From Dendrobates tinctorius (lineage: Eukaryota), in contig NW_027361696.1 of assembly GCF_039654945.1 (NCBI RefSeq), forward strand, positions 49,228,001-49,292,000: a stretch of DNA of 64,000 bases, written 5' to 3'. This document shows positions 17,771 through 58,077 of the stretch, in pieces. Each line of letters starts with the position of its first letter. Position 1 is the stretch's first letter. The notes under the pieces are model-generated. The model did no database searches and had not been told where the DNA came from. It was given only the letters and a program-made list of their open reading frames with translations. A program made the translations under genes and the position numbers.

Positions 17771-17954
17771 AACAGACAATTCTATAAAATATAACAATGT
17801 TGAGGGTGTGATCAATGAATAGAATTTCTAGAGCAGGTTCTCAGTTCTCTATGTGCTGACATCACTTCACATTCTCTCTCTCTTGATGCCTGCTGAGTGA
17901 GTGTGGTCTTCCTGGTGCCATGTTCAGCCAATCAGAGCACTCACTGCTCTGTTT

Positions 17955-19820
17955 CCCCTCCCCTTCCCACTTGCAGTCTCACAGACACAAATACTGCAGC
18001 TGCATCTCCCTCCTCATTGTCTCTTACTCATCCGTCAGTATTTTTGAAGGAATGAAGAGGTGTCTCAGGATAATAGCACCTCAATGGGGTTGTGTATTCT
18101 TCTGAAAAGCCTAATTATTAAACATTTTATTCAATAATCAGTCACCAAATAGGAACATTTAAAAAAATTGTCAATTTCCATAAATATGTAACCTGTTCCA
18201 AATGCCGATGTTCTCCTGAATCTGGCATTGTCTTTATTTTGTTCGTGTGCCTCTCCCTCCGTTCCTGAGATCTGACCTCATTTACCTTCTGTGTCAGGCA
18301 AGATTTGTTAGCCAAATGGGCATGGTCCTCAATACTTTTTTTGTGCGTGTATTCTTGATGACCACACCCCTTTGGCTGATAAGAGTAGATTTATCCAGAG
18401 CGAAGAGGGAAATAAAGTTTCCCCTCCCCTTCCCACTTGCAGTCTCACAGACACAAATACTGCAGCTGCATCTCCCTCCTCATTGTCTCTTACTCATCCG
18501 TCAGTATTTTTGAAGGAATGAAGAGGTGTCTCAGGATAATAGCACCTCAATGGGGTTGTGTATTCTTCTGAAAAGCCTAATTATTAAACATTTTATTCAA
18601 TAATCAGTCACCAAATAGGAACATTTAAAAAAAATTGTCAATTTCCATAAATATGTAACCTGTTCCAAATGCCGATGTTCTCCTGAATCTGGCATTGTCT
18701 TTATTTTGTTCGTGTACCTCTCCCTCCGTTCCTGAGATCTGACCTCATTTCCCTTCTGTGTCAGGTAAGATTTGTTAGCCAAATGGGCATGGTCCTCAAC
18801 GATTTTTTTGTGCGTGTATTCTTGATGACCACACCCCTTTGGCTGATAAGAGTAGATTTATCCAGAGTGAAGAGGGAAATAAAGTATCCCCTCCCCTTCC
18901 CACTTGCAGTCTCACAGACACAAATACTGCAGCTGCATCTCCCTCCTCATTGTCTCTTACTCATCCGTCAGTATTTTTGAAGGAATGAAGAGGTGTCTCA
19001 GGATAATAGCACCTCAATGGGGTTGTGTATTCTTCTGAAAAGCCTAATTATTAAACATTTTATTCAATAATCAGTCACCAAATAGGAACATTTAAAAAAA
19101 ATTGTCAATTTCCATAAATATGTAACCTGTTCCAAATGCCGATGTTCTCCTGAATCTGGCATTGTCTTTATTTTGTTCGTGTACCTCTCCCTCCGTTCCT
19201 GAGATCTGACCTCATTTCCCTTCTGTGTCAGGTAAGATTTGTTAGCCAAATGGGCATGGTCCTCAACGATTTTTTTGTGCGTGTATTCTTGATGACCACA
19301 CCCCTTTGGCTGATAAGAGTAGATTTATCCAGAGTGAAGAGGGAAATAAAGTATCCCCTCCCCTTCCCACTTGCAGTCTCACAGACACAAATACTGCAGC
19401 TGCATCTCCCTCCTCATTGTCTCTTACTCATCCGTCAGTATTTTTGAAGGAATGAAGAGGTGTCTCAGGATAATAGCACCTCAATGGGGTTGTGTATTCT
19501 TCTGAAAAGCCTAATTATTAAACATTTTATTCAATAATCAGTCACCAAATAGGAACATTTAAAAAAAATTGTCAATTTCCATAAATATGTAACCTGTTCC
19601 AAATGCCGATGTTCTCCTGAATCTGGCATTGTCTTTATTTTGTTTGTGTACCTCTCCCTCCGTTCCTGAGATCTGACCTCATTTCCCTTCTGTGTCAGGT
19701 AAGATTTGTTAGCCAAATGGGCATGGTCCTCAACGATTTTTTTGTGCGTGTATTCTTGATGACCACACCCCTTTGGCTGATAAGAGTAGATTTATCCAGA
19801 GCGAAGAGGGAAATAAAGTT
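17955..19820. repeat. Tandem repeat, 4 copies of 466-467 bp, near-identical
   Basis: Unit start CCCCTCCCCTTCCCACTTGCAG at 17955, 18421, 18888 and 19355. Confidence 0.95.
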
Positions 19821-28590: not shown

Positions 28591-31500
28591 TTACAGACCA
28601 AGATCTCATCATAGATAGGATCCACAGACTTCCCAAACCACAGAATATCGATAAAGATCTACCTAGAGATACCATCTTATGGGTACACTTCTTCAAGATT
28701 AAGGAAAAAATTCAACAATCGGTTAAAGATCTAGGAGGTTTTCCAGAACCCTATGCTCACCTTCCGCTATTTACGGATCTTTCAAAGGAAACGACTGAAG
28801 GAAGAAAGTCTTTTAAGCCAGTCACTTCCACCTTGAGGGAAAATAATATCCCCTATAAATGGGGCTTCCCACTTAAACTTTGGATAATCTACAAAGGAAA
28901 GATGACCGTCCTATTCTCACCTAAAGAAGGAAGAGATTTCCTGTCCTACTACAGGATACCTGACTGCCATAAAATCTCCAACTCTCAAGACCCTGGGCCC
29001 TCGTCAGAGAAGGGATGATCCAACGGAGAGACCTAGCCAATATATTTACTCACCTTGTTATAAGGCCTCTCTACACTTCTTGATTATTTGGTCAATGTAT
29101 TGTACTGTACTGCTTATTATTCTTCTTTCCACAGGTTTTCTCACTTCTCTACTACTTTATGGACTCATATATCACATGAGATTATTTTCCTTCTGGGAAT
29201 AGTGTTGTTATGCCAAAGGATGCCTCCAATGGGATCCATACACAAACTTTCCCCACTAAGGAATTAGAGCCTTCTGGATCAGCTCTTCCTGAAGGACAAT
29301 TTTGTTCTTATTGTTTTTGTGTCTCTTTTGGTTTTGGTTTCAAATAGGTAAATAGTTTGAGGTTTTTGGACAACTAAGTTCTACAAAGGTAGGTGCACTC
29401 TGGTTTCTGCATTTCCTCTACCCCACTTCATACGAACCCAGCCATTCTTGTAACATGAAAATAAAATTCGCATCATACAATGTCAGGGGGCTAAATAGCC
29501 CTTGGAAGAGATTTTCCATTGGTAGGGAGATTAACGGGATGCATCCTGAGGTTGTATGCCTTCAGGAAACCAATTTAAAAAAAGACAACCACCCTTCTAT
29601 AAATCTCAAAAATTTCCCATTTGTATTTGAATTTTGCGGCCCACGAAAGAAAGCTGGGGTTTTAACCTTGATTAGTAACTCAATTTCCTTTGAATTGCTT
29701 TCTGAAGTAAAAGACGAAAAAGGACATTATCATATTCTCCTGTGCAAATTGAACGGCCAAACCTTCACAATAGTTAATACTTATGTTCCCACCATCAGAC
29801 AAATTAGCTTCCTGAATTAGCTAATGAAAAAATTAGACACCTTACGATCAGGAACCCTACTTTTGTTACGGGACTGTGACGGACTCAGCTCCTGCTGAGC
29901 CCATTTTTTGAGTGGACCCTCTGGGTCATGGCACCCACCCACCGAGGGCGAGCTTACCTTGTGAGAATCCACCCCCTGTACAGGGAGTGTCAGGGGCAAG
30001 ACCAAGGGGGTGAGCCACCACGACTGCTGGGACCAGACGGCCGGCTCAGGGGACACTAGACGAGTGTCTGACGACAAGGACAAGCAGGAAGCAAGACGAG
30101 ACAAGACATAGGTGCAAGGTAACTTCATTAGGATAACATACAGTGTAAACAAGCAAACGTGCAAGGTGCGCGCGTGGGCACGCCAAGGTCCATAGAATGG
30201 TACGTGCCAGGTGGCACGCCTAGGTACAGGTATCGGCACGATGGCATCGGACTCCGGACTGCTGGCAACGATCGACATCATCAAGGCATCAGGCTGCGGA
30301 CATCAGCTCCGGACGTCAGGCTGCAGTCATCCAGCTCATGATCTCTGGCAGCGATCGGCAGGTTCCGGGCATCCGGCAGGCAAACCAGGTTCCAGGCAAG
30401 GAGGCACGACAGATATCCGGGCATGGTGCGTGATAGGGAACACGCCGAGGTCCAAGGCTAGGTGCGTGTGTAGGGGACACGCCAGGGTTCAAAGCTAGGT
30501 GCGTGTGTAGGGGACACGCCAGGGTTCAAAGCTAGGTGCACGTGTAGGGGACACGCCAGGGTTCACAGACAAGACACGCCAAGGCATGAGACAGAGTGCG
30601 AGTGTAGACACACGCCAAGGCACAAGGTACGAGACAGAGTGCGTGTGTAGAGACACGCCAAGGCATGAGACAGAGTGCGTGTGTAGAGACACGCCAAGGC
30701 ACAAGGTACGAGACAGAGTCCTAGGCGTGCAAAGGGCACGCCAGGGTCAGGCGAGGCAGAGTCCTGCGCGTGCAGAGAGGCACGCCAGGAACAGGGTTCA
30801 AGGACCAGGTTAGGACCTGTGCGTGCAAGAGGGCATGACAGGGTACATGGCCAAACCTGCGCGTACTATTATAGAAGCACGGGGAGGTATGCCATGGGCA
30901 GGCGAGGGCCTGCACATGCTTTAGAGAGCACGCAGAGCACAGTGTGGAAACAGCGTGAAGTGCAAGGGAGCACAGAGGGCACGGCTGGGGCACTGGCTAG
31001 CTGATCGGGCTGCGGCACTGACAGACGGGCAAGACTCCAGCAAACCCGACTGAGGCATGGCAGGCGACACAGCTGTCACTTACCGACGAGCACGGCTGAG
31101 GCACAAGCAGGCGGGCACGGCTAGGGCGCACACGGCTGAGGCACAAACAGGAGGCTAGGAAGGCCAGGCGCATGCAAAGAGCATACGAAGAAACAGAGCA
31201 AGGGAAGACAAGACGAGAAACAAGGCAGGGCTTAAGCAGAGTACAGAACCAGGAACGGAAGCAAATCAGAGCAAGAACAGAGCTAGCAGCGGAGCGTAGG
31301 CCGAAGCCCAGAGCCGGGCCAAGGGAGAACCTTGGGACTAGCCTAGAAACGTGCAAGAGAGCACAATAGGAAAGAGTGTAGCAGCGGAGCGTAGGCAAAG
31401 CCCAGAGCCGGGCCAAGGGAGAACCTTGGGACTAGACATGGAAAAGAGAAGAGGAAGGGTGCGTGTGCCAGGGAGCACAACAGAGCACCATAGGAGAGAG

Positions 31501-34040
31501 CGAGGCAGAGCAAGCAAAGACCATAGGGAAAAACAAGGCAGAGCAAGACAAGGTACGGAACAAGGCATAGCGAAAACAGGCAAGGCAGAGAAACAGAAGG
31601 ACTACAAGTCCAAGCAGGACAAAGACGAACATGGCACAACAGACAAACATAAGACAAGGCACAGGACAAGAGATGGAGTACGGGCACGGAGCGTGTGCAG
31701 AGACGCACGACAGGGCAGAGTGCAAGGGCACAGAATAGAGGGAGTGCCCCACAGACCAAGCAGCCATGCAGGGACACCACACAATACTCAGGCCCTGAGC
31801 AAAGGAAGGGGCGGCCTGATATAGGGCATAGCACCTCCTCTTCCAGGTCAGGACCAGGGGAGCACTTCCGGGTTCAGATCCACAGGATAACAGAGCACAG
31901 TCACATGATCAGAGTTCCAGACATGACGAGACGACTGCAGATCCAGTGCTGAAACCTAGACAGGTCACATGATCAGAGTTCTAGACATGACGAGATGATT
32001 ACCGAACCAGACAGTGCAGGATCTTTAGGAAATGTCACATGATCAGCGTTCCAGACATGACGAGATGATTGCAGAACCAGACAGTGCAGGATCCAGGCAG
32101 GGACACATGATCAGGGACTCTAGACAAGACGAGAAGATCACAGAAGGCAGAGCAGAAACGCAGGCATCCTGCAGCTCAGACATGAGGTGAGAGTGCACAC
32201 TGCTCTAGTGAACATGCAGGACAGCAGACAAGATATGCGCATGCACATCGCTCCAGGAGTTCTTGAGACAAAACAGACATGGCAGACATGGCGGACATGA
32301 CAGGGACTTTAATATGGTGCCAGATGGTGTACTAGACTCCACCTCTCCCAGCAGACAAAAAATGCAATCCTTGAACAGCTGGATTTATAATCACGAGCTA
32401 TTCGATTCATTCCGCTGTTTGAACACCACATCTAGAGAATTTACTCATTTTTCTGATGGCCATCAGTCGGCATCTAGAATAGATCTGATACTCTCAGATG
32501 TCTTCTCCTTGCCAAGGTTCTCCTCCAGCTCCATACTTAATAAATCTATTTCAGATCATTCCCCGGTAACTGCAGAACTGATAATAGGGTCCCCAATTCA
32601 TGTGGAAATTCAACTCCTCTCTGCTTTATAACCCCACCATCAAATCTGAAATCAGCTCAGCCTTATAAAATTATTTTAGTGAAAACGAATCAAACCTCTT
32701 CAGTCCGTTTACCTATTGGAATGCTCACAAGGCGGTGTTGAGGGGAGTCTTGATTCAAATTTCCTCCAGACAAAAGAAAATTAATAGGGATAAAATCCTT
32801 ACCCTACAACAGTCTATTAAATCTAAAGAAGAGGAACTATCTTGATCCTCTGTTTCCTCTAACAAACAAGCTGTATTATCAGAACTTACTGATCTCAGGT
32901 TGCAGTTAAGGAAAATCATATTCAATTTTTACGACTCAGCTATTAGATCAGCAAAATGCAAACATTACTTATCTATAAATCGCCCTTCAAAATACATGTC
33001 AAACAGAATTAAGAATATACGGAAACGGAATAGAATTGACAGTATAACGTCCTCTAATGGTACATCCCTGGTCCACCCTAAAGATATTGTAGGAGCTTTT
33101 GCCGATTATTACAAAAATCTGTACAATATCAACCAAGACCACCACAATATGCAGCCATCTACCTCAGAGATTGGATCATTTCTTTCCAGCATGAACCTTC
33201 CAAAGCTTAACCCTGAAGACTTATCATTTTTGCCTTCTCCCTTCAATGTACAAGAAGTCCTAGATACTATAAAAAAACTTAAAACATTCAAATCACCCGG
33301 CCCAGACGGGTTTAGTAATGATTATTTCAAGTCTTTTAGTAATATATTAACCCCCCACCTTGTCAAAGTATTTAACTCAGCTTTCCAAACAGGTCAATTT
33401 CCTAAAGAGATGCTGGAAGCGACAATTATCGTAATCCCAAAACCAAATTCTGACACTAGCCAAATTTTTAATTATAGACCTATATCCCTTATCAATACAG
33501 ACGTAAAAATGTATGCAAAGATCCTGGCCAATAGACTAAATCAATTCCTCCCGAGTTTAATTTCCAATGATCAGATAGGGTTCATCAAAGGAAGACAATC
33601 CATAGATGGTGCGAGAAGACTCATTAACATAATTAAGCTTATTTCCTCGAACAAACTCAGGGCCATTGTTACTCTCTTGATGCTGAGAAAGTGTTTGACT
33701 GCCTTAATTGGTCATATCTCGAAGCAACTCTCAAAAAATTTGGAATGGCTTCTCAGATCACGAGAGGTATTATGGCTTTGTACTCCGGCCCTGGTGCGAG
33801 GGTTTATTCCAACAATCATCTTTCCTCTACGTTTAATATAGCTAATGGGACCAGACAGGGTTGCCCATTCTCACCATTGCTTTTTGCATTAGCTATTGAA
33901 CCTCTGGCCCAACTTATCAGGAGCAGCACAAAGATCTCGGGAATCAAAACTTTGCACAGAGATTTTAAAATAGCATTGTATGCAGACGATATTATTCTTA
34001 CCCTCACAGATCCAAGCCACTCTATCTCTGCCTTCCAGGA
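28591..34040 (+). mobile_element. L1-clade LINE, degenerate and interrupted
   Basis: ORF1 C-terminus (IDRIHRL...YKWGFP, to 29018); ORF2 APE endonuclease SYNVRGLN/LQET from 29455, resuming GDFN/SRID/SDH after 32302; RT motifs KSPGPDG, YRPISL, GTRQGCP, LYADD; stops and frameshifts. Confidence 0.92.
29864..32302. mobile_element. Non-coding LTR-type insertion (TG...CA) with internal tandem repeats, splitting L1 ORF2
   Basis: Begins TGTTACG, ends CATGACA, and interrupts the L1 endonuclease just before its GDFN motif; no TSD seen. Confidence 0.6.
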
Positions 34041-39744: not shown

Positions 39745-39796
39745 ATGAAGAACTTCTCAGGGATCGTAATCATGTTCTTCATCTACATCACAACTG
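39745..39796 (+). CDS. Gene B exon 1 (signal peptide)
   Basis: GCCACCATG, MKNFSGIVIMFFIYITT, donor GTAAGA. Confidence 0.9.
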
Positions 39797-42700
39797 GTAA
39801 GAAGTAATCTATGTTCTCAATAACTGGGCCATACGTAGTACAGTTTGATGATGTTATGTATTATTTCCAATCTTGGCCATGCCAAATACTAAACCCTAAA
39901 ATAGACGGTGGATGGTGGGGTTAGACCACCTACTGTTAGGCTCCTTTCATTCCAGGCATTGGTCTCACCTGTCTGTTGAACTTGAAGGTCATCTGTATGT
40001 AATAATATTCTCTTTACTGTTCTAAAGCGGTGAGTCTTTACTGTGAGAAGTGTGAAAACTACCATGGAAAAACTTGCGAAAACACAACTACCGAGATCTG
40101 CGATCCATCAGTCACAAGTTGCAGAACTACTGTGATGTTTGAACATATCGGTAACTACATTTCATGATTAACAATATACGTTTCTTAAAAATGTCCCAAA
40201 TAATACATTCTTATAGTAGGTATATTCTTGTGAATAGGAACAGTATTATAGTAGGTATATTCTTATACATGGAGCAGTATTATAGTAGCTATATTCTTGT
40301 ACAATATGGGGAAGTATTATAGTAGTTATATTCTTGTACATAGGGGCAATATTATAGTAGTTATATTCTTGTACAAAGGAGCAGTAATATAGTAGTTATA
40401 TTCTTGTACATAGGGGGTAGTATTATAGTAGTTATATTCTTGTACATAAGGGCAGTATTATAGTAGTTATAGTCTTGTACATAGGGAGCAGTATTTATAG
40501 TAGTTATATTCTTGTACATAGAGGACAGTATTATAGTAGTTATAGTCTTGTACATAGGGAGCAGTATTTATAGTAGTTATATTCTTGTACATAGGGGCAG
40601 TATTATTATAGTTATATTCTTGTACATAGGAGCAGTATTATAGTAGTTATATTCTTGTACATAAGGGCAGTATTATAGTAGTTATAGTCTTGTACATAGG
40701 GAGCAGTATTTATAGTAGTTATATTCTTGTACATAGAGGACAGTATTATAGTAGTTATAGTCTTGTACATAGGGAGCAGTATTTATAGTAGTTATATTCT
40801 TGTACATAGGGGCAGTATTATTATAGTTATATTCTTGTACATAGGAGCAGTATTATTATAGTTATATTCTTGTACATAAGGGCAGTATTATAGTAGTTAT
40901 AGTCTTGTACATAGGGAGCAGTATTTATAATAGTTATATTCTTGTACATAGGGGCAGTATTATAGTAGTTATATTCTTGTACATAGGAGCAGTATTATAG
41001 TAGTTATAGTCTTGTACATAGGGACAGTATTGTATTAGTTATATTCTTGTGCATGAGTCAGTATTTTATAGTAGTTATATTGTTGTACATAGGGTTAGTT
41101 TTATAGCAGTTTTAGTCTTGTACATAAGAGGCAGTATTATAGTAGTTATATCCTTGTACATAAGGGGCAGTATTATAGTAATTATATTCTTGTACATAGG
41201 GGGCAGTATTATAGTAGTTATATTCTTGTACATAGGGACAGCATTATAGTAGTTATATTCTTGTACATAGGGAGCATTTTTATAGTAATTATATTCTTGT
41301 ACATAGGGACAGTATTGTATTAGTTATATTCCTGTGCATGAGGCAGTATTTTATAGTAGTTATATTGTTGTACATAGGGGCAGTTTTATAGTAGTTTTAG
41401 TCTTGTACATAAGAGGCAGTATTATAGTAGTTATATCCTTGTACATAAGTGGCAGTATTATAGTAATTATATTCTTGTACATAGGGGCAGTATTATAGTA
41501 GTTATATTATTGTACATAGGGACAGCATTATAGTAGTTATATTCTAGCACATAGGGGGCAGTATTATAGTAGTTATATTCTTGTACATAGGGGCAGTATT
41601 ATAGTAGTTATATTCTTGTACATAGGGGCAGTATTACAGTAGTTATATTCTTGTACAGTGGGGCAGTATTATAGTAGTTATATTCTTGTACATAGGGGCA
41701 GTATTATAGTAGTTATATCCTTGTACATAAGGGGCAGTATTATAGTAATTATATTCTTGTACATAGGGGCAGTATTATAGTAGTTATATTATTGCACATA
41801 GGGACAGCATTATAGTAGTTATATTCTAGCACATAGGGGGCAGTATTATAGTAGTTATATTCTTGTACATAGGGGCAGTATTATAGTAGTTATATTCTTG
41901 TACATAGGGGGCAGTATTATAGTAGTTATATTCTTGTACATAGGGGGCAGTATTATAGTAGTTATATTTTTGTATATAAGAGTGTAAGAGCAGTATTATA
42001 GTAGTTATATTCTTGTACATAGCGGGCAGTATTATAGTAGTTATATTCTTGTATATTCTTATATTTCCCATACACGAGGCTATTTTGGTGATGGGTGCTG
42101 TGCATTCTCCTTTGCCAGTTTCGTTGCATGCGTAGCACTGCATGCCAGTTAGGGTCGAATTCACTGTCACTGTTGGAGAAAAAAAAAGACAATGGAAATA
42201 GTTTGTCACCACAGAGGTATTGCACCTTCTCCTAAGGTGTAGTGCCCCACCATCCAGGTAAGTTGGGAGCTCCTTTCCACACTCCAGCACTCGCATCCCA
42301 CACAACAGGGTAGTTCTGCACAATCACATTGCGGCTCAGCGCTTAGAGAGTAGCAGAGCACCTCTGGTGGTTCCCTGCATGGAACACTGGACGTGCTGGG
42401 AGGTGGGTGGAGTTGAGATCCATATAAAAGATTGGGAAGGTTTAGAATTACAGTTCAGTCTGACTGTCTAGAAGTCAGTCTGACGGGAGGTCAGGCGGGA
42501 GGAGGACAGTCAGTCAGGAGAGTCTGAGGACGGGTCCGAGGAGAAGAAGAGCTGCAGCTGCCTCGGTGATCTGAGCCAGCTGGCACGGGAAAGGAACAGA
42601 AGGAGAAAGACGTAGAACTGCAACCTAAGCTTCCATAAGAGAGGGAAGGAACAGTGCGGAACGAAGGAGTAGGAGAACAGAGAGGAGTTGTGGGTCGGAA

Positions 42701-45700
42701 GAGGAACCCTGCCTATAGATTCTCAGTGCAAGGCCGGGGCCCGGTCCCCGAGGTTGTATGGACGCTTATGGTTCTGCAGCAGACACCGGTGGAGTAGTTG
42801 GTTGTAAATGCACTACTCCCATCTAAGACTTGGGGCACAACAGCAACTGAATAGAGAGCCAGGACTCTGGAGAAGGGAGTCTCTGAGAGAGGCTACAGCT
42901 GTCTGCCATATGAGTAGAGTTGTTAGGAACATCTGACAGGAGGAACTCCAGAGTATCACGGTACTGGAGCTCTTCACACCTTAAGGCGCAATAGAGGAGT
43001 CGTTCAGGAAAGGTACATGTTGGCGGAGTGTTGGAGAGGAGAATCCTGACTTGCCTGGGAGGTTGATTGAGTCTCTGCCCCGGAGGACACGGCACGGAGG
43101 CAGGCACCAGTGTGTACCATGGACTGTGAGTAAAGCTTTGGAACTACAAGCCCTGGTGTCTTCCATTCCTTTCTGCGCTAACACCGTCAGCACCGCTACA
43201 TCTGGGTACCAGCATTCCTCACACCGCCTGCGCCTATCCTCATCTATTGCAATTACACTGCCCTGGGGTTACAGTTTCACCTGTGGGGAGCTACACCATC
43301 TATGCTGCAACACACCATCAGCCCCAGAGGATCTGCACACAGCGTTGGCTTAACATCTTGCTTGCCAAACACCACAGGTGGCATCACGAACTATTCCATT
43401 TCATTAACTACATTCCCCCATTACTTGGGTGCCCAGGGCCACGGACCGGGTCACCGCTGCTGTGACACATTCCCCTGACACCGGCCCGGTACCAAGCACC
43501 CCACAGCCCTGGGAGGGCGACCCAATTTTGGCGTCACGAACAGGATGACGAGACCCGATACCATCGAGTTCTGTGCGCCTGAAATTGTGAGACTTTGAAC
43601 TTTTGAAAATGTGCAGAAGACCCAATTTAATAGACTGTAAAATGGACATTAGAAATGGCCGCTGGCGCAGAGAAGAAGGGCGTGAAGAGATGGGAGGTCC
43701 TAGGAAAAGACCGCGAAGAGTATTGGGCCTTCCCTGCCTGAATTACTATGTGACAGCAACATGGCCCACCCCCCGAGTAGTTCGTATACTGGCTTGGTAT
43801 GGAGGCGCTGGAAGAAGACGCCGCCCCTGGAAGGAGGGGCAGAAGAAGCCAGTGGCGGGAAAGGGGCCGAGGCAGGAAGAAGAACGCCAGAACGCCATTT
43901 TGGAGCATGAGGGAAGGAGGCCTGCGGAGCACGGGGAAACGGATCTCCCTGGCGCCATGGCTGAAGGCTCCGACCCGATCTCAGAGATGAACCGCCGGCA
44001 GCTGGAAGAAGAAATAGTCGAGCTGACCACCCGGCTGCAGCTGAGACAGGAGGCCTTGGAGAGGCTGAACCGGCAACATGCCCAGGAGGGGCCTACGCCT
44101 GCGGTACCCGCTCCACCGGTACCTGCTGAGGCCGCGCTATTGCCTGGACCTGACGCGGCTGCGCAGGTCCCATCGGAGACCCCTGCGGACCCGGAACCAT
44201 CACCCGCTCCACCACCGCTAGCACCCTGGCCAGCCATTCCGGTGGATATCCCGGCAGCAGCTCACCGCCTCAAGCCTGCACTGGAGCTGGAAGACTGCCA
44301 GGAGTGCCCAGGTAGGACTGCAGCCCCTGAACCTGGGAAGGCCCTGGGTTGTGCGCCCGTGGTAGCGGCAGGGCAGGTCGTGCTGGACCTTGTCTGGGAC
44401 CGGGATGCTAGTCCCGAGGGTGAGACATCTGAACCCCTAACGGTGGTGCCGCGGGCCCCGGTGGGTGCGAGCAGGTCCCGGGAGGAGCGGGAGGAAGAAG
44501 AGAACTGGGCCAGCTGTCAGGCCACCATCCGGCAGCTGGCAGCTGAATATCGGGAGAGGAAGCAGAGAAAGATGGCTGTGCTGGGCCCGTATCTAGCCCG
44601 AAAGGAGAAAACCGTGGTGGTCACTTTGGTCACCGGGATTCAGCAGGATGGGGCCAGGTTCTCAACGTGAATCGGGAGCGGGGGTTCGGGTTTATCTCTG
44701 ACCCCAAACGGATCTCCGACCTGTTCTTTAGCCAGAGAGACGTTGAGTCCCATCTGAGTAAGGGACACCTGGACCGGAATCTGGAACCTGGGGAGTATGT
44801 GACATTCACCCGGCATGAGGGGCTCAGGGGGTGATATGCCCTGAATATACGCCGTATCCCGGAGGAGCTTGCTGAGAGGTACAGGCTGAAGCGACCTGCT
44901 GCACCTCCACCCACAGTTGTTACCCAGACTGCTAGAACACCGGCTGCCCTTGCACCAGCTCCAGCCCGGCAGCCTAAGCCAAAGGTCCCCAACTTGACAC
45001 CTTGGAAAGAGGAGTACCTGAGGATGGCCAATGAGTACCTTGCATCTGGTAGCAGTTCCAGTTCGGCTTCCAGAACCCTTTGTTGTCTTGCAGCCCGCGG
45101 ACATGCTGTGTTTAACGGGGGGGGGGTTGGCTTAACATCTGCTTGCCAAACACCACAGGTGGCGTCACGAACTATTCCATTTCATTAACTACATTCCCCC
45201 ATTACTTGGTCGCCTAGGGTCACGGACCGGGTCACCGCTGCTGTGACACATTCCCCTGACACCAGCCCGGTACCGAGTACCCCACAGCCCTGGGAGGGCG
45301 ACCCATCACCACCCTAGATTTCACCAACCAACTCCAAAAAGAGACCCATGGGTTCAATGGCACAAACAGACAGAAATGAGTCCCTGTGCAAGAACACTAT
45401 ATGAGTCCTTTTCATTTTTCACAGTTCTCCTATGACAGAAGCTCCTTATTGCTCTAGGAGGTGGTAGTGGCCCCATTACTTCTTGGGCCTCAGGCTGCAC
45501 CAATGATATGTCCGCCCCTGCTTGGGTTGTATTTTATGGGAAGTTTGTAAACCTCTACCTCTTTTCTGAAAATGAAAAGATGGAGCATATGGAAATCCAA
45601 CAGCCCAATCCTGTATCTAGGTAGGGCACTGTCTAAAAACGTAACAAAAATGTCTCATTTGCTTTTGAGTGCACAGTACCTGCTTGAACGCCATGGTTGA

Positions 45701-47768
45701 AGTACTTGTTCCCACAACATGACACCTCCGTGTAAACCCTGGGACCACCGGTGTTATATGCCAACTGCCGACCACACAGGTTACCCGTTGCACAACCTTT
45801 ATAGACAACGTTCGAGCTGGAATCTGCAGAAATGGGAGAATTATTAGGAATGGGATCTGTGACGAGGTGTCCATACACACTTCACGGGCTGGTCTTACCA
45901 TTGACATACACAGTTTGGATCGTCATGCAGCGATCTTGTACTCCGCCACATTGGAGGGATGTCAGGTTGGACGCTGCACAGGTCACATTGTTACCTTCAC
46001 AGGACTCACAAAATAGAGCGGCAACAGGGACTCGAGCTGGAAAAGAAAATGAAAGTCCTGAATAAATAGGAAGAAAATGACCACAATTGGATGATCTTTC
46101 CTAAGCCGGATCAGAACTACATTTTCTATTCTAAGGCTACTTTCACACTTGCGCTTTTTTGCTGCGCATTTTTTGCGCACACAAACCGCATCATGCGTTT
46201 GTGGGTGTTTTTTTGCGGGTTTTGGTGCGCTTTTTTAAAAAACGCATGCGTTTTTTAATGGGTGTTTTGCTGTAAAAAAAACGCATTGCGTGCGCATGCG
46301 TTTTTTTGGGACAAGTCGGACGCACAAAAAATGCAACAGGATGCATTTTGTGCGCCCGAGTGCACACTACAAAAAAACGCATGTGCGTACAAACGCATGT
46401 GTATGCGCACCTATGCGCACCCATGTTAAAGTATAGGGGAAAAAACGCATGCGTTTTTTTGCGCTACAAAAAGCGCAAAAAAACGCAAGTGTGAAACCAG
46501 CCTCACATGGACATGAAATTGCTTTCAATCTAAAGTTCTCTGCACCATGATCTGTTAATTTCCACCATGATCTTATCAATTCAATTTTCAATTTCATGTC
46601 CTTTTCTAAAAAGTTACCAGGGAACCCCAAAACACCATATTGGGGATCATAAGAAGAAGCAAGTCCATACTCTTCTATTTCTCGGAGGGTGACGCTGTCA
46701 AAGCTCCCATTTTAATAAAATGATTTACAAATAGACTTCTAGAATTGAGCACCATTGGTACCATTTGTGAATTAGGTCCCCATATATTTAAAATTTGGCC
46801 CTTCGGCTTTTGCACCATCAACTGCATCGGTTGAACGAGAGCCTCCTATAAACTGTGAATAAATGGAAAATATTATCTATTGACAGCATAGGATGAATAT
46901 TCTGACTGACTTGCTTGTAACATACCGTAGTAGGTGTCAGTGTTGCATAAGTCTGTGATGCAGCACGTGGAACTAACATAGGTTTTCCTGAAGCCCAAAT
47001 CCGTATAAATTGTCTCATTGCACACAAGTCCCTGTGAACAACCTTTGTATGTCCATTCTGTAACGCTCCCATTCTCTGAAAAAGAATGCATAATAGTAGT
47101 TACATTCTTGTACATAGGGGCAGTATTATAGTAGTTATATTCTTGTAAATAGGGGCAGTATTATAGCAGTTATATTCTTGTACATAGGGACAGCATTATA
47201 GTATATTTTTGTCATTTAAAATCAATTGTGTTATATTTTTAGGTAATGGGAAGTTCTACCAGATCTGGAAGTCTTGTGCAAACTCTCCATCCCTGTGTAA
47301 CCTAACTTTCAACATGACAGTGGGAATTGACATCTATAGCTTAACAAAGTGCTGCAAGGGAAACCTCTGTAATAGTGAATCACTACCATGTAAGTTGAAT
47401 GAATGTGCTATACCCATATATTTCATTTTACTATATGTCCAGAAATTATCTCCTGTTATAAAGATTAACCATATTTATGCAGCTGAGTGCTTATCCTTAT
47501 ACAAATATTGGCAAGTCTGTCAGAATTTTGCAAACAGGACCAATAATAAATGGGTTCTACGGTCAAAGCTATTACTCTGAAGCATATCCAGGGCATGTCA
47601 TTGTTGAACAGTGCTTCATAAAAAGACAAAATTATATTGTCCTACTTGGAAAATTCATCTTTGATTAAAAAAAATTGTTAAGAATAGATTAGTTTTAGAA
47701 TGTCCGGCTCTGAGACCCAAGGGATCATCTAATCGGAGAGTGTAACAGGCGGCCAGTGCTCATTTTCA

Positions 47769-47819
<51 letters not shown>

Positions 47820-50800
47820 GTACTAGCTGAAAAGCCCGATGCTGCCCGGGCATAGTAACTAACTACGGTTAGTTATAACAAATTATAATGATTATATCTA
47901 TATATATAAAGCTGAGTGTAGTGCCCCGCCCACTCCGCATAGCCACATTCACTATAATATCCCACATTATCCTGTCAGCCAGAGCTACCGGACTACTACC
48001 CCTAATATCCCACATTATCCTGTCAGCCAGAGCCACTGGACTGCTACCCCTAATATCCCACATCATCCCGTCAGCCAGAGCCACCGGACTACTACCCTAA
48101 TCATCCCATCAGCCTGGGGTCAGAACCAGAGCGCTGAGTGGATTTGCCCTGACTTGCATACCAATGATCCCTTTAATAGAACCCAGGGGTCAGCATCAGA
48201 GCGCTGAGGGATTTGCCCTAACTTCCATACAGGAGATCCCTTTAAGAGAGCCTGGGGTCAGAACCAGAGCATTTGAAGACAATTGCCCTGACTTCCATAC
48301 TGGGGATCCCTTTAAGAGAGGCCTGGGGTCAGAACCAAAGCACTGGATAGATTTGCCCTGACTTCCATAAAGGAGATCCCTTTAAGAAAGGCCTGGGTGT
48401 CAGTACCAAAGCACAGAGTGGATTTGCCCTAACTTCCATACCAATGATCCCTTTAAGAGACCCTGGGGTCAGAACCACAGTGCTGGATGGATTTGCTCTA
48501 ACTTCCATACCAATGATCCCTTTAAAAGGGAAGATGTGCCTATTGGATGGAGGATGTGTGATGGGTATATGGGAATGGGAGGGGGGATTCATTTCTGTCA
48601 TGTGCTCTCTGCTCCTTTTTGGGGGCAGACAATGGCTGGGAGCTTATGTTCCCAGGGATGCTAGGTTTCTCCCACCATGTCAGTGCCTGCTGAGGTGTTG
48701 TCAAGTGGGAAAACTTGCCCATAGCAAACAATCACAGCTCAACTTCTTTTAACCAGCTCTGGTGAAATGAGAGATGCTTAGTGATTGGTTGCAAGGAAAA
48801 CTGTTGCTCATAGCAACCAATCACAGCTCGGCTTCTCTTGAACAGCTCTGGTGAAATGAAAGATGCTTCATGATTGTGTGTGTGTATCACCAACCATACA
48901 TACATACATACATTCAGATATATATACACAGTACAGACCAAAAGTTTGAACACACACCTCATTCAAAGAGTTTTCTTTATTTTCGTGACTATGAAAATTG
49001 TAGATTCACTCTGAAGGCATCAAAACTATGAATTAACACATGTGGAATTATGTAATTAACAAAAAAGTGTGAAACAACTGAAAATATGTCTTATATTCTA
49101 GGTTCTTCAAAGTAGTCTCTTTAAGCTCTTTAAGCTCATCAAGAGAATGCCAAGAGTGTGCAAAGCAGTAATCAAAGCAAAAGGTGACTACTTTGAAGAA
49201 CCTAGAATATAAGACATGTTTTCAGTTGTTTCACACTTTTTTGTTAATTATATAATTCCACATGTGTTAATTCATAGTTTTGATGCCTTCAGAGTGAATC
49301 TATAATTTTCAGTCATGAAAATAAAGAAAACTCTTTGAATGAGAAGGTGTGTGCAAACTTTTGGTCTGTACTGTGTATATATGGGCAGCACTACCAAAAT
49401 TATACAATTGGTGCAGAACCTATTCAGCAGTGTCCAAACAGCCGAGTTAATAAAATAAAAACATAGGCAGCACTCCAAATTAAATGTGAAAAGTGGATAC
49501 TTTACTGATCCTCAAGTGGCGACATTTCAACAGTTACCCGTCTTTATCTAGCCAGGCTTGATAAAGACGGGTCACCGTTGAAACGTCGCCACTTGAGGAT
49601 CAGTAAAGTATCCACTTTTTTCACATTTAATTTGGAGTGCTGCCTATTTTTTTTAATATATATATCTTAATGAATTTAACCCAGAATTTGATGAGTTCTT
49701 TTATGCATGGGACTAATATGATTTTTCTTGAACCCAGTGGTGCCAACAAACTACAAAGAAAAAAGAAATGGGGTAGAATGCCCCTACTGTTATGCAAGGG
49801 GAAAAGGAGTAAAAAGTTGCACTCCATCTGACACCATGAAATGTCGGGGTCCCCAGTCGCGGTGCTTCTCCTTTGCTGGTAAAATCTGTAATTCAAGTAA
49901 GTATAAGTTTCCTCTTTTGCTCTTTTCCTTTGCCACGTTTTGTACATAACATCTTCCATTTTTACTTAGCTCATCAAAGGGCTAGGAAAGCCTGGTCCTT
50001 CCAGCAGGTGGGGTCCCCTATGAGGTGTTCTTACCCAGTTAAAATTTTAAAAAAAGTTATAAGGCATTTGTTATCTTTTTGACAAGGTGCAAAAACTGTA
50101 AATCTTGTGGTTCCCACTTCCTTAGTATGTCATCTGTGTCGGTACATGCCAGTCCTGTTTCTGCTTCTGTTTCCAAGCGCTGCCATGCTCTTGTCGCGGA
50201 CAGTGAGAGGCGACCCCTCTAGTTCAGTGTTCTCAGGTACTTGTAGTTCTGTCCATACTGGGAGATCAGGAGCTAGCTTTTTAGGGTGTGTTTCCACTAA
50301 GCACATTCATTGCGCTTTGGACAGAGCGGAAAGTCTGCTCCGCCCAAAGCCCCGCCCCTTCTGTACGCGCAGTGATTCCGGATGTGGTCATTGAACACAT
50401 GCTGTATCACCCCATCGTATACATAGACTGAGTTATTTACCTTGTGGAGACTGAGCATCTTCCCAAGGTAAACAGACATGCTGATTTCTAAAAAGACGCG
50501 CCGCATGTCCGGTTTCATGGGTGTGTCACCCACGTATTAGGACGCATAGTGGACTTGGGATTTCATAAAATCCCCTCCACTATGCTGTAACACCTGGACG
50601 CTGCGGCTATACGCAGCATTCAATTCGCAGCAAATCCGGATGTAATACAGCCTGTGGAAACATACCCTTAGTGTTTGTTTCCTTCCTTGTGGCCTGGGTG
50701 GGGCTGCAGGGTGTTTAATCTCCTGAGAGCCTACTGTCCACTGCCAGTTATAATTTGCTCTTAGACAACTTCTCAGCATTCTGCTTTGACTTCCTGTTGA

Positions 50801-55088: not shown

Positions 55089-58077
55089 CTAGCTGAAGAG
55101 CCCGGTGCTGTCCCGGCATAGTAACTAAATACAGTTAGTTATAACAAATTATAATGATTATATATATATATATATATATATATAAAGCTGAGTGTAGAGC
55201 ACTGCCCACTCTGCATAGCCACATTCACTATAATATCCCAAATCATCCCGTCAGCCAGAGCCACCGGACTACTATCCCTAACATCCCACATCGTCCCGTC
55301 AGCCAGAGCTACCGGACTACTACCCCTAATATCCCACATCGTCCCCTCAGCCAGAGCCACCGACTACTACCCCTAATATCCCACATCATCCCATCAGCCA
55401 GAGCTACCGGGCTACTACCCCTAATATCCCACATCATCCCGTCAGCCAGAGCTACCGGACTACTACCCCTAATATCCCACATCATCCCGTCAGCCAGAGC
55501 TACCGGACTACTACCCCTAATATCCCACATCGTCCCCTCAGCCAGAGCCACCAGACTACTACCCCTAATATCACACATCATCCCGTCAGCCAGAGCCACC
55601 GGATAACTACCACTAACATCATCCCGTCAGCCAGAGCCACCGGACTACTACACCTAATATCCCACATCGTCCCGTCAGCCAGAGCCACCGGACTACTACC
55701 CCTAATATCCCACATCATCCCCTCAGCCAGAGCCACCGGACTACTACCCCTAATATCCCACATCATCCCCTCAGCCAGAGCCACCGGACTACTACCCCTA
55801 ATATCCCACATCATCCCGTCAGCCAGAGCCACCAGACAACTACCACTAACATCATCCCGTCAGCCAGAGCTACCGGACTACTACCTGTAATATCCCACAT
55901 CGTCCCGTCAGCCAGAGCCACCGGACTACTACCCCTAATATCCCACATCATCCTGTCAGCCAGAGCCACCGGACTACTACCCCTAATATCCCACATCATC
56001 CCCTCAGCCAGAGCCACCGGACTACTACCCCTAATATCCCACATCATCCCATCAGAGCCACCGGACTACTACCCCTAACATCCAACATCATCCCATCAAA
56101 GCCACCTGACTACTACCCCCAATATCCAAATAACAGAAAAACTGACGGCACATCAAGAACTAGTCTGAATAGGTGCATACCAAAAAACAGCTTACATATG
56201 AAAATGAGAAAAATGGTTGCACTCGCATTAAGACATGTCAATATGAAATATATGAAGTGTGAATAGCATAAATGGGTTTTGAAATGTAGAAAAAACATAT
56301 GAGATGCTCCACCCTTCACCAAGTTGTGATTTTAATTACATCCAATCACATTTGGTTCCTATCTTCCTATAAAATAGGCTTTACCAAGTTATTAGCCTGA
56401 GGTAAGTGTTCACACTAGGCAGTTAGATTAGGGACCCATTCGATCATGAGATTACCTTGACTTTGGTGAACGGGCTCAAATTTTTTAGCAAAATTTTGTG
56501 CTAAGTATGTCATATGTTTTTTCTAAATTTCAAAAGCCATTTATGCTATTCACACTTCATATGTTTCATATTGACATGTCTTAATGCAATTGAGTGCAAC
56601 CATTTTTCTCATTTTGATATGTATCCCTAATATCCCACATCATCCCGTCAGCCATGGCCACCGGACAACTACTACTAATATCAAACATCATCCCGTCACA
56701 GCCGCCGGACTACTACCCCTAATATCCCACATCATTCCGACAGAGCCACCGGACTACTACCCCTAATATCCCACATCATCCCATCAGCCAGAGCCACCGG
56801 ACTACTACCCCAAATATCCCCCATCAGCCCGTCAGCCTGGGGTCAGAACCAGTGGAATGGTCCTAACTTCCATACTGGGGATCCCTTTAAGAGAGGCCTG
56901 GCATCAGAATCAGAGTGCTGTATGGATTTGCCCTTACGTTCATGCCAATGATCCCTTTAATAGAAGCCTGGGGTGAAAATCAGAGCGCTGAGGGATTTAC
57001 TCTAAATTACATACCGGAGATCCCTTTAAGAGAGGCCTGGGGTCAGAATCAGAGCACAGAGTGGATTTGCCCTCACTTCCATACCAATGATCCCTTTAAG
57101 AGAGACTTGGGTCAGAACCAGTGCGCTGAGTGGAATTGCCCTAACTTCCATACCAGGGATCGCTTTAAGAGAGCCTGGAATCAGAAGCAGAGCGCTGAGT
57201 GGATTTGCCCTGACTTGCATACCAATGATCCCGTTAATAGAATCCTGGGGTCAGAAACAGAGCGCTGAGGGAGGAGATTCTTTTAAGAAAGCCTGGGGTC
57301 AGTACAAAAGCATTTGAAGGCAATTGCCCTGACTTCCATACCGGGGATCCCTTTAAGAGAGCCTGGAGTCAGAACCAGAACGCTGAATGGAATTGCCCTA
57401 ACTTCCATACCAGGGATCCCTTTAAGAGACCCTGGGGTCAGAACCACAGAGCTGAGTGGAACGGTCCTAACTTCCATACTGGGGATCCCTTTAAGAGGGG
57501 CCTGGGGTCAGAACCAGAGCACTTAGTGGAATTGCCCTAACTTCCATACCAATGATCCCTTTAAGAGACCCTGGGGTCAGAACCACAGAGCTGAGTGGAA
57601 CGGTCCTAACTTCCATACTGGGGATCACTTTAAGAGGGGCCTGGGGTCAGAACCAGAGTGCTTAGTGGAATTGCCCTAACTTCCATACCAATGATCCCTT
57701 TAATAGAAGCCTGGGGTCAGAATCAGAGCGCTGAGAGATTTGCCCTAACTTCCATACAGGAGATGCCTTTAAGAGGAAAGATGTGCCTATGGGATGGAGG
57801 ATGTGTGGGTATATGGGCAGGGAGGGGGGGGATTCATTTCTGTCATATGCTCTCTGCTCCTTTCTGGGGGGCAGACAATGTCTGGGAGCTTATGTTCTTG
57901 GGGATGCTAGATTTCTCCCACCCAGTCAGTGTTTGCAGAGGTGTTGTCGTGGAGTGGGAAAACTGTTGCTCATAGCAACCAATCACAGCTCAGCTTCTTT
58001 TAAACAGCTCTGGGGAAATGAAAGATGCTTGTGATTGGTTGGTGATACACATATACATTCAATTTTAAATATATAGA
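55089..58077 (-). mobile_element. Non-autonomous Helitron-like element (long copy) with expanded 48-bp and ~69-bp arrays; fold-back insert at ~56150-56620
   Basis: On the minus strand: A|TC 5' end at 58077 and GC hairpin plus CTAG|T 3' end at 55089. Confidence 0.7.

What the first reader, a model, noticed from the sequence alone, without database searches (positions are those of the whole stretch)
40151..47242. Four-exon antisense fragment of a 3-domain uPAR-like gene inserted into a minisatellite inside gene B intron 2
Seen: the 7,092-nt intron consists of ~60 nt unique sequence, 1.85 kb of 35-bp minisatellite, a ~5.0-kb insert (42061-47090), about 3 more same-orientation units and ~40 nt unique sequence. 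The insert keeps introns, so it is a DNA-level copy. It encodes half an LU domain, a full LU domain and the start of a third, so the donor is not a two-domain gene like A or B. One breakpoint cuts mid-exon and the other lies ~15 nt from an acceptor. Both share short microhomology with the repeat unit (ATATT, GCAT). The exons are open, but one conserved Cys is now Phe. Inference: template-switch or microhomology repair at an unstable minisatellite copies paralogous exon blocks within the cluster. Since all LU introns here are phase 1, a sense-oriented event of this kind could change domain number in frame. Gene B pre-mRNA would also carry antisense to the donor gene.
Basis: partly seen in the sequence, partly recalled or inferred. 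Interest (0 to 1): 0.72.

Follow-up and report, generated by a model that had tools for sequence, protein, structure and literature searches.

The report
Truncated uPAR-like gene copy in intron
A poison-frog gene for a two-domain secreted protein carries, backwards inside one intron, a recent 5-kb partial copy (exons 3 to 6 of 7) of an intact three-domain uPAR-like gene from the same 102.5-Mb sequence record; it is an ordinary dead gene fragment that the public annotation lists as a protein-coding gene.

Summary
The window comes from Dendrobates tinctorius (not human).

- **Structure:** Intron 2 of a 227-aa two-LU-domain gene (gene B) spans 40151-47242. It holds a 35-bp minisatellite: 52 units on the left and about 3 on the right, in the same orientation. 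The array is interrupted at 42061-47090 by about 5 kb of GC-richer DNA.
- **Exons:** On the minus strand this DNA carries four open, phase-1, GT-AG exons.
- **Donor:** The donor is XP_073425969.1, an intact 325-aa protein with three LU domains, a signal peptide and a hydrophobic tail. It lies on the same 102.5-Mb record and has one orthologue per frog species. The copy covers donor residues 58-237, which are exons 3, 4, 5 and the first 109 nt of exon 6 of 7. It is identical at 178 of 180 residues.
- **Missing parts:** No other exon of this copy is in the window.
- **Verdict:** It is a young, intron-bearing, truncated duplicate, that is, an unprocessed pseudogene fragment. NCBI annotates it as protein XP_073427347.1, whose tail is translated minisatellite.
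- **Not tested:** The proposed microhomology or template-switch mechanism could not be tested because donor DNA was not retrievable. "Within the cluster" is not shown.

Interest is low to moderate.

The parts
39745..39797 (+). Gene B exon 1 (start codon and signal peptide)
   Evidence: ATG at 39745 and gt donor after 39797. This matches the start of the 227-aa gene called on the strand opposite to the fragment.
40027..40150 (+). Gene B exon 2, first half of LU domain 1
   Evidence: Open frame with the CxxC..C..C..C pattern. Pfam UPAR_LY6 profile positions 2-37, below threshold. The start coordinate is approximate.
40211..42060 (+). 35-bp minisatellite, left block, 52 units with higher-order repeats; the last unit is cut after 22 nt and followed by a 9-nt partial re-copy
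42061..47090 (-). About 5.0-kb partial copy of the three-domain uPAR-like gene (donor XP_073425969.1), antisense to gene B
   Evidence: 178 of 180 residues identical to donor residues 58-237. GC 0.53-0.56. No part is repeated elsewhere in the window.
46926..47075 (-). Copy of donor exon 3 (second half of LU domain 1), 150 nt, phase 1-1
   Evidence: HMMER hit to P0002 at E 5e-16. Exon numbering follows the 7-exon Spea orthologue.
45899..46036 (-). Copy of donor exon 4 (first half of LU domain 2), 138 nt, phase 1-1
45680..45823 (-). Copy of donor exon 5 (second half of LU domain 2), 144 nt; Cys to Phe in the CCxxxxCN motif
42061..42169 (-). Copy of the first 109 nt (about four fifths) of donor exon 6 (first half of LU domain 3), cut inside the donor's Met codon
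   Evidence: Exon extent judged from the Spea orthologue.
43344..45305 (+). LTR-like element nested in the copy's exon 5-6 intron: 180-nt terminal direct repeats, primer-binding-site-like motif, G-run, broken ORF with a cold-shock domain
46134..46503 (.). Miniature inverted-repeat element in the copy's exon 3-4 intron
   Evidence: 29-nt inverted ends, 90% complementary.
47091..47203 (+). 35-bp minisatellite, right block, about 3.2 units; its 3' end grades into unique intron sequence
47243..47386 (+). Gene B exon 3, second half of LU domain 1 (CCKGNLCN)

Best explanation
The piece at 42061-47090 is a recent, partial, DNA-level duplicate of the Dendrobates tinctorius gene for XP_073425969.1. That gene is a conserved seven-exon, three-LU-domain uPAR-like gene with a signal peptide and a hydrophobic C-terminal tail (the tail resembles a GPI-anchor signal; no predictor was run). 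It lies elsewhere on the same 102.5-Mb record.

The duplicate carries exons 3, 4, 5 and four fifths of exon 6 with their introns. It lies in reverse orientation inside the A/T-rich 35-bp minisatellite of intron 2 of a two-LU-domain gene (gene B). It lacks a promoter, exons 1, 2 and 7, and the end of exon 6, and it has lost a structural cysteine. It is therefore a dead unprocessed pseudogene fragment. The public protein model built on it is an artefact whose last ~55 residues are translated minisatellite.

Shown here: the anatomy, the identity of the donor, the extent of the copy and its near-identity to the donor.

Inferred:
- The piece entered by non-homologous repair (end joining or replication template switching) of a break in the array. 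I put this at about 0.5.
- The event is young, of the order of a few million years. I assumed the copy drifts neutrally at about 1e-9 changes per site per year. Only one residue change has arisen on the copy's side, against the roughly ten that about 25 million years of such drift would give.
- The nested LTR-like element, whose repeats differ by 5%, was already in the donor's intron when the copy was made.
For: - **Source:** The window's own model P0001 is XP_073427347.1 from D. tinctorius, assembly GCA_039654945.1 (assembly identity confirmed in PMC12467463).
- **Donor family:** An exon-wise HMMER search led to the 326-aa Pseudophryne protein. A word search with that protein gave 28 relatives, essentially one per anuran species and mostly about 320 aa.
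- **Intact donor:** The 90% cluster of the Ranitomeya protein contains the intact D. tinctorius protein P0037, on the same 102,543,479-base record.
- **Identity:** 178 of 180 residues match the donor, and the same splice junctions are used.
- **Donor architecture:** Three UPAR_LY6 stretches, and an end-to-end alignment with uPAR structures (1ywh_A, E 2e-19).
- **Exon structure:** The Spea orthologue has seven coding exons with the same intron positions.
- **No further exons:** tblastn with four orthologues and half-domain HMMs find no other exon of this copy in the window.
- **Not a retrocopy or mobile element:** There is no poly-A tail, no target-site duplication and no transposon end at either junction. 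Nothing in the insert recurs elsewhere in the window.
- **One array:** The right-hand units carry the same variants as left-hand units, for example the GGGACAGCA ending.
- **Assembly quality:** The published D. tinctorius assembly was built from HiFi reads longer than 10 kb (PMC11152451). Such reads would span the whole 7.1-kb intron.
Against: - The donor's DNA could not be fetched ("sample's file is too large"). Nucleotide identity, intron colinearity, exact breakpoints and microhomology are therefore untested.
- The link between GCA_039654945.1 and the HiFi assembly paper is probable but not documented in what I read.
- The protein data do not date the event relative to the split from Ranitomeya. 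The residues shared with the donor (Q in GRQL, A in VQAV) also occur in the outgroup Anomaloglossus, so they may be ancestral.
- The phase of the array across the insert proves nothing. The left block ends at unit position 22 and the right block starts near position 33.
Confidence: 0.8

Rival explanations
1. Homology-driven exchange between minisatellite arrays. The donor's intron 2 would carry the same 35-bp array close to the acceptor of exon 3. The right junction would then come from recombination or gene conversion between arrays rather than from a non-homologous join.
For: The right junction lies only 12-15 nt from the acceptor, and the array starts almost exactly at a unit boundary. Such arrays are common in this genome's introns: several families occur in this window alone.
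Against: The left junction is inside exon 6, and that exon is intact in the donor protein. At least one end must therefore be non-homologous. No donor DNA was available to show an array there.
Confidence: 0.1
2. Assembly artefact. A piece of the donor locus, or of its other haplotype, was joined into this intron through the repeat.
For: Both junctions lie in a tandem array, the classic place for chimeric joins. The two differences from the donor (2 of 180 residues) could be allelic.
Against: There is no gap at either junction. The only N run is at 10301-10443. The left join is array-to-mid-exon, which needs a real broken allele anyway. Reads longer than 10 kb were used for the published assembly, and the array is only 1.85 kb. 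The donor model is complete without these exons being borrowed.
Confidence: 0.06
3. Transposon-mediated capture. The array and the gene piece would form one mobile unit (Helitron-like or Pack-type) that picked up host exons.
For: DNA-level gene fragments with introns are what such elements carry. The insert is flanked by like-oriented repeats.
Against: No terminal inverted repeats, hairpin or target-site duplication bound the unit. The array's outer ends fade into unique intron sequence. Nothing of the insert or array recurs in the other 57 kb.
Confidence: 0.03
4. A working nested gene, as annotated (XP_073427347.1), encoding a 241-aa protein.
For: NCBI calls it a protein-coding gene. All four exons are open with usable splice sites.
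Against: The model has no signal peptide. It begins with half an LU domain at an ATG that straddles the junction, has lost a disulfide cysteine, and ends in about 55 residues of translated minisatellite with an intron placed inside the array. Openness over 541 nt is expected for so young a copy.
Confidence: 0.02

Closest known systems
Unprocessed (duplicated) pseudogene fragments, i.e. partial gene duplicates lodged in introns of other genes (my own knowledge of the category). The same assembly is reported to hold untranscribed partial exon duplicates of Dmrt1 (PMC12467463).
   Same: It keeps introns, is truncated at both ends, has an intact parent gene in the same genome, is nearly identical to the parent, and has no promoter.
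   Different: It sits inside a minisatellite. It has been given a protein-coding model in the public annotation.
uPAR (PLAUR) and the anuran 'urokinase plasminogen activator surface receptor-like' orthologue group (XP_073425969.1, XP_077116108.1, XP_063797775.1 and others)
   Same: The fragment's exons are 98.9% identical to the D. tinctorius member. The parent has three LU domains and aligns over its full length with solved uPAR structures.
   Different: The fragment has only half of domain 1, domain 2 and most of the first half of domain 3. Whether the parent is the true PLAUR orthologue was not tested. Sources name orthologues inconsistently as uPAR-like, PLA2 inhibitor-like or LYPD3.
Templated insertions made by microhomology-mediated break-induced replication, fork stalling and template switching, or polymerase-theta end joining (my own knowledge)
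   Same: A kilobase-scale stretch was copied from elsewhere on the same 102.5-Mb record and inserted in inverted orientation at a fragile repeat. A 9-nt re-copy of neighbouring repeat sequence lies at the left junction.
   Different: Microhomology could not be measured without donor DNA. No second template switch or local triplication is seen.
Two-domain three-finger proteins of amphibians (sodefrin precursor-like factors; PMC11659521)
   Same: Host gene B (227 aa) and gene A have two LU domains. Gene B has 10 cysteines in domain 1 and 8 in domain 2, the count that paper gives for the beta class, and within its range for the gamma class.
   Different: This concerns the host gene only, not the insert. 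Family membership of gene B was not tested by search or tree.

Membership tests
Ly6/uPAR (LU, three-finger) domain | Pfam PF00021 match above the curated cut-off | tested here: met
   The database's own spliced model P0001 scores 28.0 bits against a cut-off of 24.8. Single exons score 16-18 bits at the correct halves of the profile.
Ly6/uPAR (LU, three-finger) domain | Cysteine framework with a C-terminal CCxxxxCN motif; each domain split into two exons by phase-1 introns | tested here: met
   The second-half exon of domain 2 has CCGNKYFN, so one cysteine is lost.
Three-domain uPAR-like gene (orthologue group of XP_073425969.1), as an intact member | Signal peptide, three complete LU domains, hydrophobic C-terminal tail, seven coding exons | tested here: not met
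   Only exons 3-5 and 109 nt of exon 6 are present. Exons 1, 2 and 7 are absent from the window. It is a fragment of a member, not a member.
Unprocessed (duplicated) pseudogene fragment | Introns kept at the parent's positions | tested here: met
   The junctions YY/A/RVP, VN/D/SSS and QA/V/TVN match the parent protein and the Spea exon map.
Unprocessed (duplicated) pseudogene fragment | Intact parent gene elsewhere in the same genome | tested here: met
   P0037, 325 aa, on the same 102.5-Mb record of GCA_039654945.1.
Unprocessed (duplicated) pseudogene fragment | Disabling lesions | tested here: met
   Truncated at both ends. Cys to Phe at donor residue 195.
Processed retrocopy | Intronless, poly-A tail, target-site duplication | tested here: not met
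   Three introns are present. There is no A-run or duplicated flank at either junction.
Transposon-captured gene fragment (Helitron or Pack-type) | Transposon termini bounding the captured DNA; multiple copies | tested here: inconclusive
   No termini and no second copy are seen in the 64 kb. The rest of the genome could not be searched.
Microhomology-mediated templated insertion | Microhomology between donor and target at both junctions | not testable with these tools
   Donor DNA was not retrievable. Only the left breakpoint is fixed to 42060/42061, through the donor's ATG codon.

The most novel reading that the evidence does not exclude
The 35-bp minisatellite is a recurrent capture site for ectopic DNA in this 6-Gb genome. 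In addition, the roughly 540 nt of near-perfect antisense exon sequence, transcribed as part of gene B's intron, pairs with the parent uPAR-like transcript and feeds small-RNA or editing pathways, giving the fragment a regulatory effect.
Probability: 0.05. Interest if true: 0.6.

Novelty: new member of a known kind. Interest (0 to 1): 0.25.

Why it matters
The main value is curation. XP_073427347.1 should be treated as a truncated pseudogene, not as a second uPAR-like protein of D. tinctorius. Counts of LU-domain genes in poison frogs that include it are inflated by one.

It is also a dated, clean example of a kilobase-scale intron-bearing gene piece dropped into a tandem array in a very large amphibian genome. 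All LU exons are phase 1-1, so the same kind of event in sense orientation could add or remove LU domains in frame. That is a plausible route to the one-, two- and three-domain diversity of this family. This locus does not demonstrate that route.

Tried and rejected
- **Donor in the window:** tblastn of the four exons against the window finds only genes A and B at 30-35% identity.
- **Interleaved intact gene:** Half-domain HMMs on all six frames and tblastn with four orthologues find no further exon. Two weak minus-strand hits in colinear order (59.5 kb and 33.6 kb, E above 2) lack the cysteines and are noise.
- **Word search:** The search with the 81-aa open frame around exon 5 found nothing, because of the length window.
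- **Rfam:** The whole window gives no family, so there is no ribozyme in the LTR-like repeats.
- **DNA of related loci:** Not available for the donor locus, the Pseudophryne orthologue or a Ranitomeya imitator copy because the files are too large.
- **Dropped inference:** I had read the public model's lack of untranslated regions as a sign of ab initio prediction. The collection records only coding ranges, for gene B too, so I dropped this.
- **Unusable source:** The accession table in PMC12822217 is misaligned in the stored text and was not used.
Exons were searched singly by reference, and the only spliced models used were ones the databases returned.
  - Gene B was therefore not searched as a protein.
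  - The N run at 10301-10443 was left alone.
- **Unspent searches:** The third word search was not used, because the remaining questions need DNA, not proteins.
Full report
**Source and handling**

The window is from the dyeing poison frog, Dendrobates tinctorius, assembly GCA_039654945.1, on a record of 102,543,479 bases (assembly name confirmed in PMC12467463). It is not human. The N run at 10301-10443 was left as it is. The only spliced proteins used are those the databases returned.

**What is in the sequence**

- Gene B lies on the plus strand. Its start codon and signal peptide are at 39745-39797. Exon 2 (first half of LU domain 1) ends at 40150. Exon 3 (second half) starts at 47243. Two more exons lie near 49.8 and 52.1-52.3 kb.
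- A 227-aa gene is called over exactly this span.
- Intron 2 (40151-47242, phase 1) has about 60 nt of unique sequence, then 52 units of a 35-bp A/T-rich minisatellite (40211-42060). About 5.0 kb of GC-richer DNA follows (42061-47090, GC 0.53-0.56 against 0.31). Then come 3.2 more units in the same orientation (47091-47203) and about 40 nt of unique sequence.
- The unit occurs nowhere else in the window.
- The outer edges of the array are degenerate. The right-hand units share variants with left-hand units. This fits one array that was interrupted.

**The four exons**

On the minus strand the insert carries four open exons:

| Exon | Coordinates | Length | Content |
|---|---|---|---|
| copy of donor exon 3 | 47075-46926 | 150 nt | second half of LU domain 1 |
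| copy of donor exon 4 | 46036-45899 | 138 nt | first half of LU domain 2 |
| copy of donor exon 5 | 45823-45680 | 144 nt | second half of LU domain 2 |
| copy of donor exon 6 (cut) | 42169-42061 | 109 nt | first half of LU domain 3 |

- The three complete exons have AG and GT borders and are phase 1-1. The fourth has its AG.
- The introns are 889, 75 and 3,510 nt.
- The 889-nt intron holds a 370-bp inverted-repeat element (46134-46503).
- The 3,510-nt intron holds an LTR-like element (43344-45305). It has 180-nt terminal direct repeats that are 95% alike, a primer-binding-site-like motif just after the first repeat and a G-run just before the second. Its ORF is broken and contains a cold-shock domain (PF00313, 32.3 bits). 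I describe this element only.

**The donor**

1. Single exons give sub-threshold UPAR_LY6 hits at the right halves of the profile.
2. A word search with the open frame around exon 5 found nothing because of its length window. I therefore ran the full HMMER search with the first exon alone. It returned the window's own model (P0001, XP_073427347.1, 241 aa) and a 326-aa Pseudophryne corroboree protein with a signal peptide, three LU domains and a hydrophobic tail.
3. A word search with that protein gave 28 relatives, essentially one per anuran species and mostly about 320 aa.
4. The 90% cluster of the Ranitomeya variabilis protein contains the intact D. tinctorius gene product, XP_073425969.1 (P0037, 325 aa). 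It is on the same 102.5-Mb record, spans 22.1 kb, and has no other gene called within 10 kb.
5. P0037 has three UPAR_LY6 stretches. It aligns over residues 22-322 with solved uPAR (1ywh_A, E 2e-19).
6. In Spea bombifrons the orthologue has seven coding exons with the same intron positions. In Spea it has a ~300-aa UPAR_LY6 gene on each side in the same orientation. In Xenopus tropicalis one such gene was seen upstream.

**Extent and age of the copy**

- The copy corresponds to donor residues 58-237, that is, exons 3, 4, 5 and about four fifths of exon 6.
- It is identical at 178 of 180 positions. One difference is Cys to Phe in the CCxxxxCN motif of domain 2, on the copy's side. The other is Ser in the copy against Leu in the donor. 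The copy keeps the residue seen in Ranitomeya, so this change is on the donor's side.
- Copy and donor are equally distant from every orthologue, for example 176 of 180 each to Ranitomeya variabilis.
- One change in about 410 non-synonymous sites suggests an age of a few million years under neutral drift, if the rate is about 1e-9 per site per year. That rate is my assumption, and the interval is wide.
- The residues shared with the donor also occur in Anomaloglossus, so they do not by themselves place the event after the split from Ranitomeya.
- The 5% divergence between the LTR-like repeats is larger than the copy's divergence from the donor. This suggests that the element was already in the donor's intron. 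It is a prediction, not a result.

**Junctions**

- *Left:* The copy matches the donor up to the first two bases of its Met codon. Base 42060 cannot be donor sequence, because Met has a single codon. The last array unit stops after 22 nt and is followed by a 9-nt near-copy of the preceding repeat bases. Such small local re-copies are seen at end-joining junctions (my own knowledge), but irregular units also occur elsewhere in this array.
- *Right:* Only 12-15 nt of intron remain upstream of the acceptor. The boundary is uncertain by about 3 nt, because GCA followed by T also fits a variant unit.
- Without donor DNA the proposed microhomologies cannot be measured. Short A/T-rich matches to an A/T-rich unit are weak evidence.
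- The repeat phase across the insert (position 22 to about 33) carries no weight.

**What it is not**

- It is not a retrocopy: it has introns, no poly-A tail and no target-site duplication.
- It is not bounded by transposon ends, and it is not repeated in the window.
- It is not an interleaved intact gene. Exon 6 is cut, and neither half-domain HMMs nor tblastn with four orthologues find exons 1, 2 or 7.
- A misassembly is unlikely. The join is gap-free, one end is array-to-mid-exon, the donor model is complete, and the published assembly used HiFi reads above 10 kb (PMC11152451). Only read mapping can exclude it.

**The public annotation**

XP_073427347.1 starts at an ATG (47091-47089) that straddles the right junction. 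It has no signal peptide and reads from the cut exon 6 into the array. It places an intron inside the array (GT at 41903, AG near 41332) and stops at 41320. Its last ~55 residues are translated minisatellite. I regard it as an artefact built on a pseudogene fragment.

**Verdict**

The donor is now named. The mechanism, "within the cluster" and the antisense-RNA idea remain untested.

The object is a young unprocessed pseudogene fragment, a well-known kind of thing. Untranscribed partial exon duplicates of Dmrt1 have been reported in this same assembly (PMC12467463). Interest is low to moderate. The practical result is an annotation correction and a clean case for studying DNA capture at tandem arrays.

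Noticed in passing
window 41320-47091 (minus strand): NCBI protein model XP_073427347.1 is built on the truncated copy. Its ATG straddles the junction, an intron is placed inside the minisatellite, and about 55 C-terminal residues are translated repeat.
   Followed up: yes
window 43344-45305: LTR-like element with 180-nt terminal direct repeats (95% alike), a primer-binding-site-like motif and a G-run. Its broken ORF carries a cold-shock domain (PF00313, 32 bits), an unusual domain for such an element. No target-site duplication was seen. The flanking GC-rich DNA at 42176-43343 is unexplained.
   Followed up: partly
window 46134-46503: Miniature inverted-repeat element with 29-nt ends and internal palindromes rich in the motif AAAAACGCATGCGTTTTT.
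   Followed up: no
window 47955-48525 and 55231-57776: The same pair of arrays (a 48-bp unit followed by a 70-bp unit) occurs twice: once in gene B's next intron and once downstream of the gene. This is probably the internal repeats of one transposon family.
   Followed up: no
window 17951-19820: Four tandem copies of a 467-bp unit, 99% alike, so a very recent amplification.
   Followed up: no
window 30001-32200: GC-rich (0.57), strongly purine-skewed stretch with several 36-79-bp arrays. Cysteine-rich open frames on the minus strand here are composition artefacts, not LU exons.
   Followed up: no
window 5736-14389, with the N run at 10301-10443: Gene A, a second two-LU-domain gene on the plus strand. 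Its exons lie near 5.7, 10.1 and 14.3 kb, and the last exon was not securely found (weak hit at 17532-17717). An N run lies in its intron and was left alone.
   Followed up: partly
L001:3268-26097 (Spea bombifrons) and L002:1-18827 (Xenopus tropicalis): In Spea the orthologue of the donor has a ~300-aa UPAR_LY6 gene on each side in the same orientation. In Xenopus one such gene was seen upstream. In Spea the whole seven-exon gene spans 6.1 kb, against 22.1 kb in D. tinctorius.
   Followed up: partly
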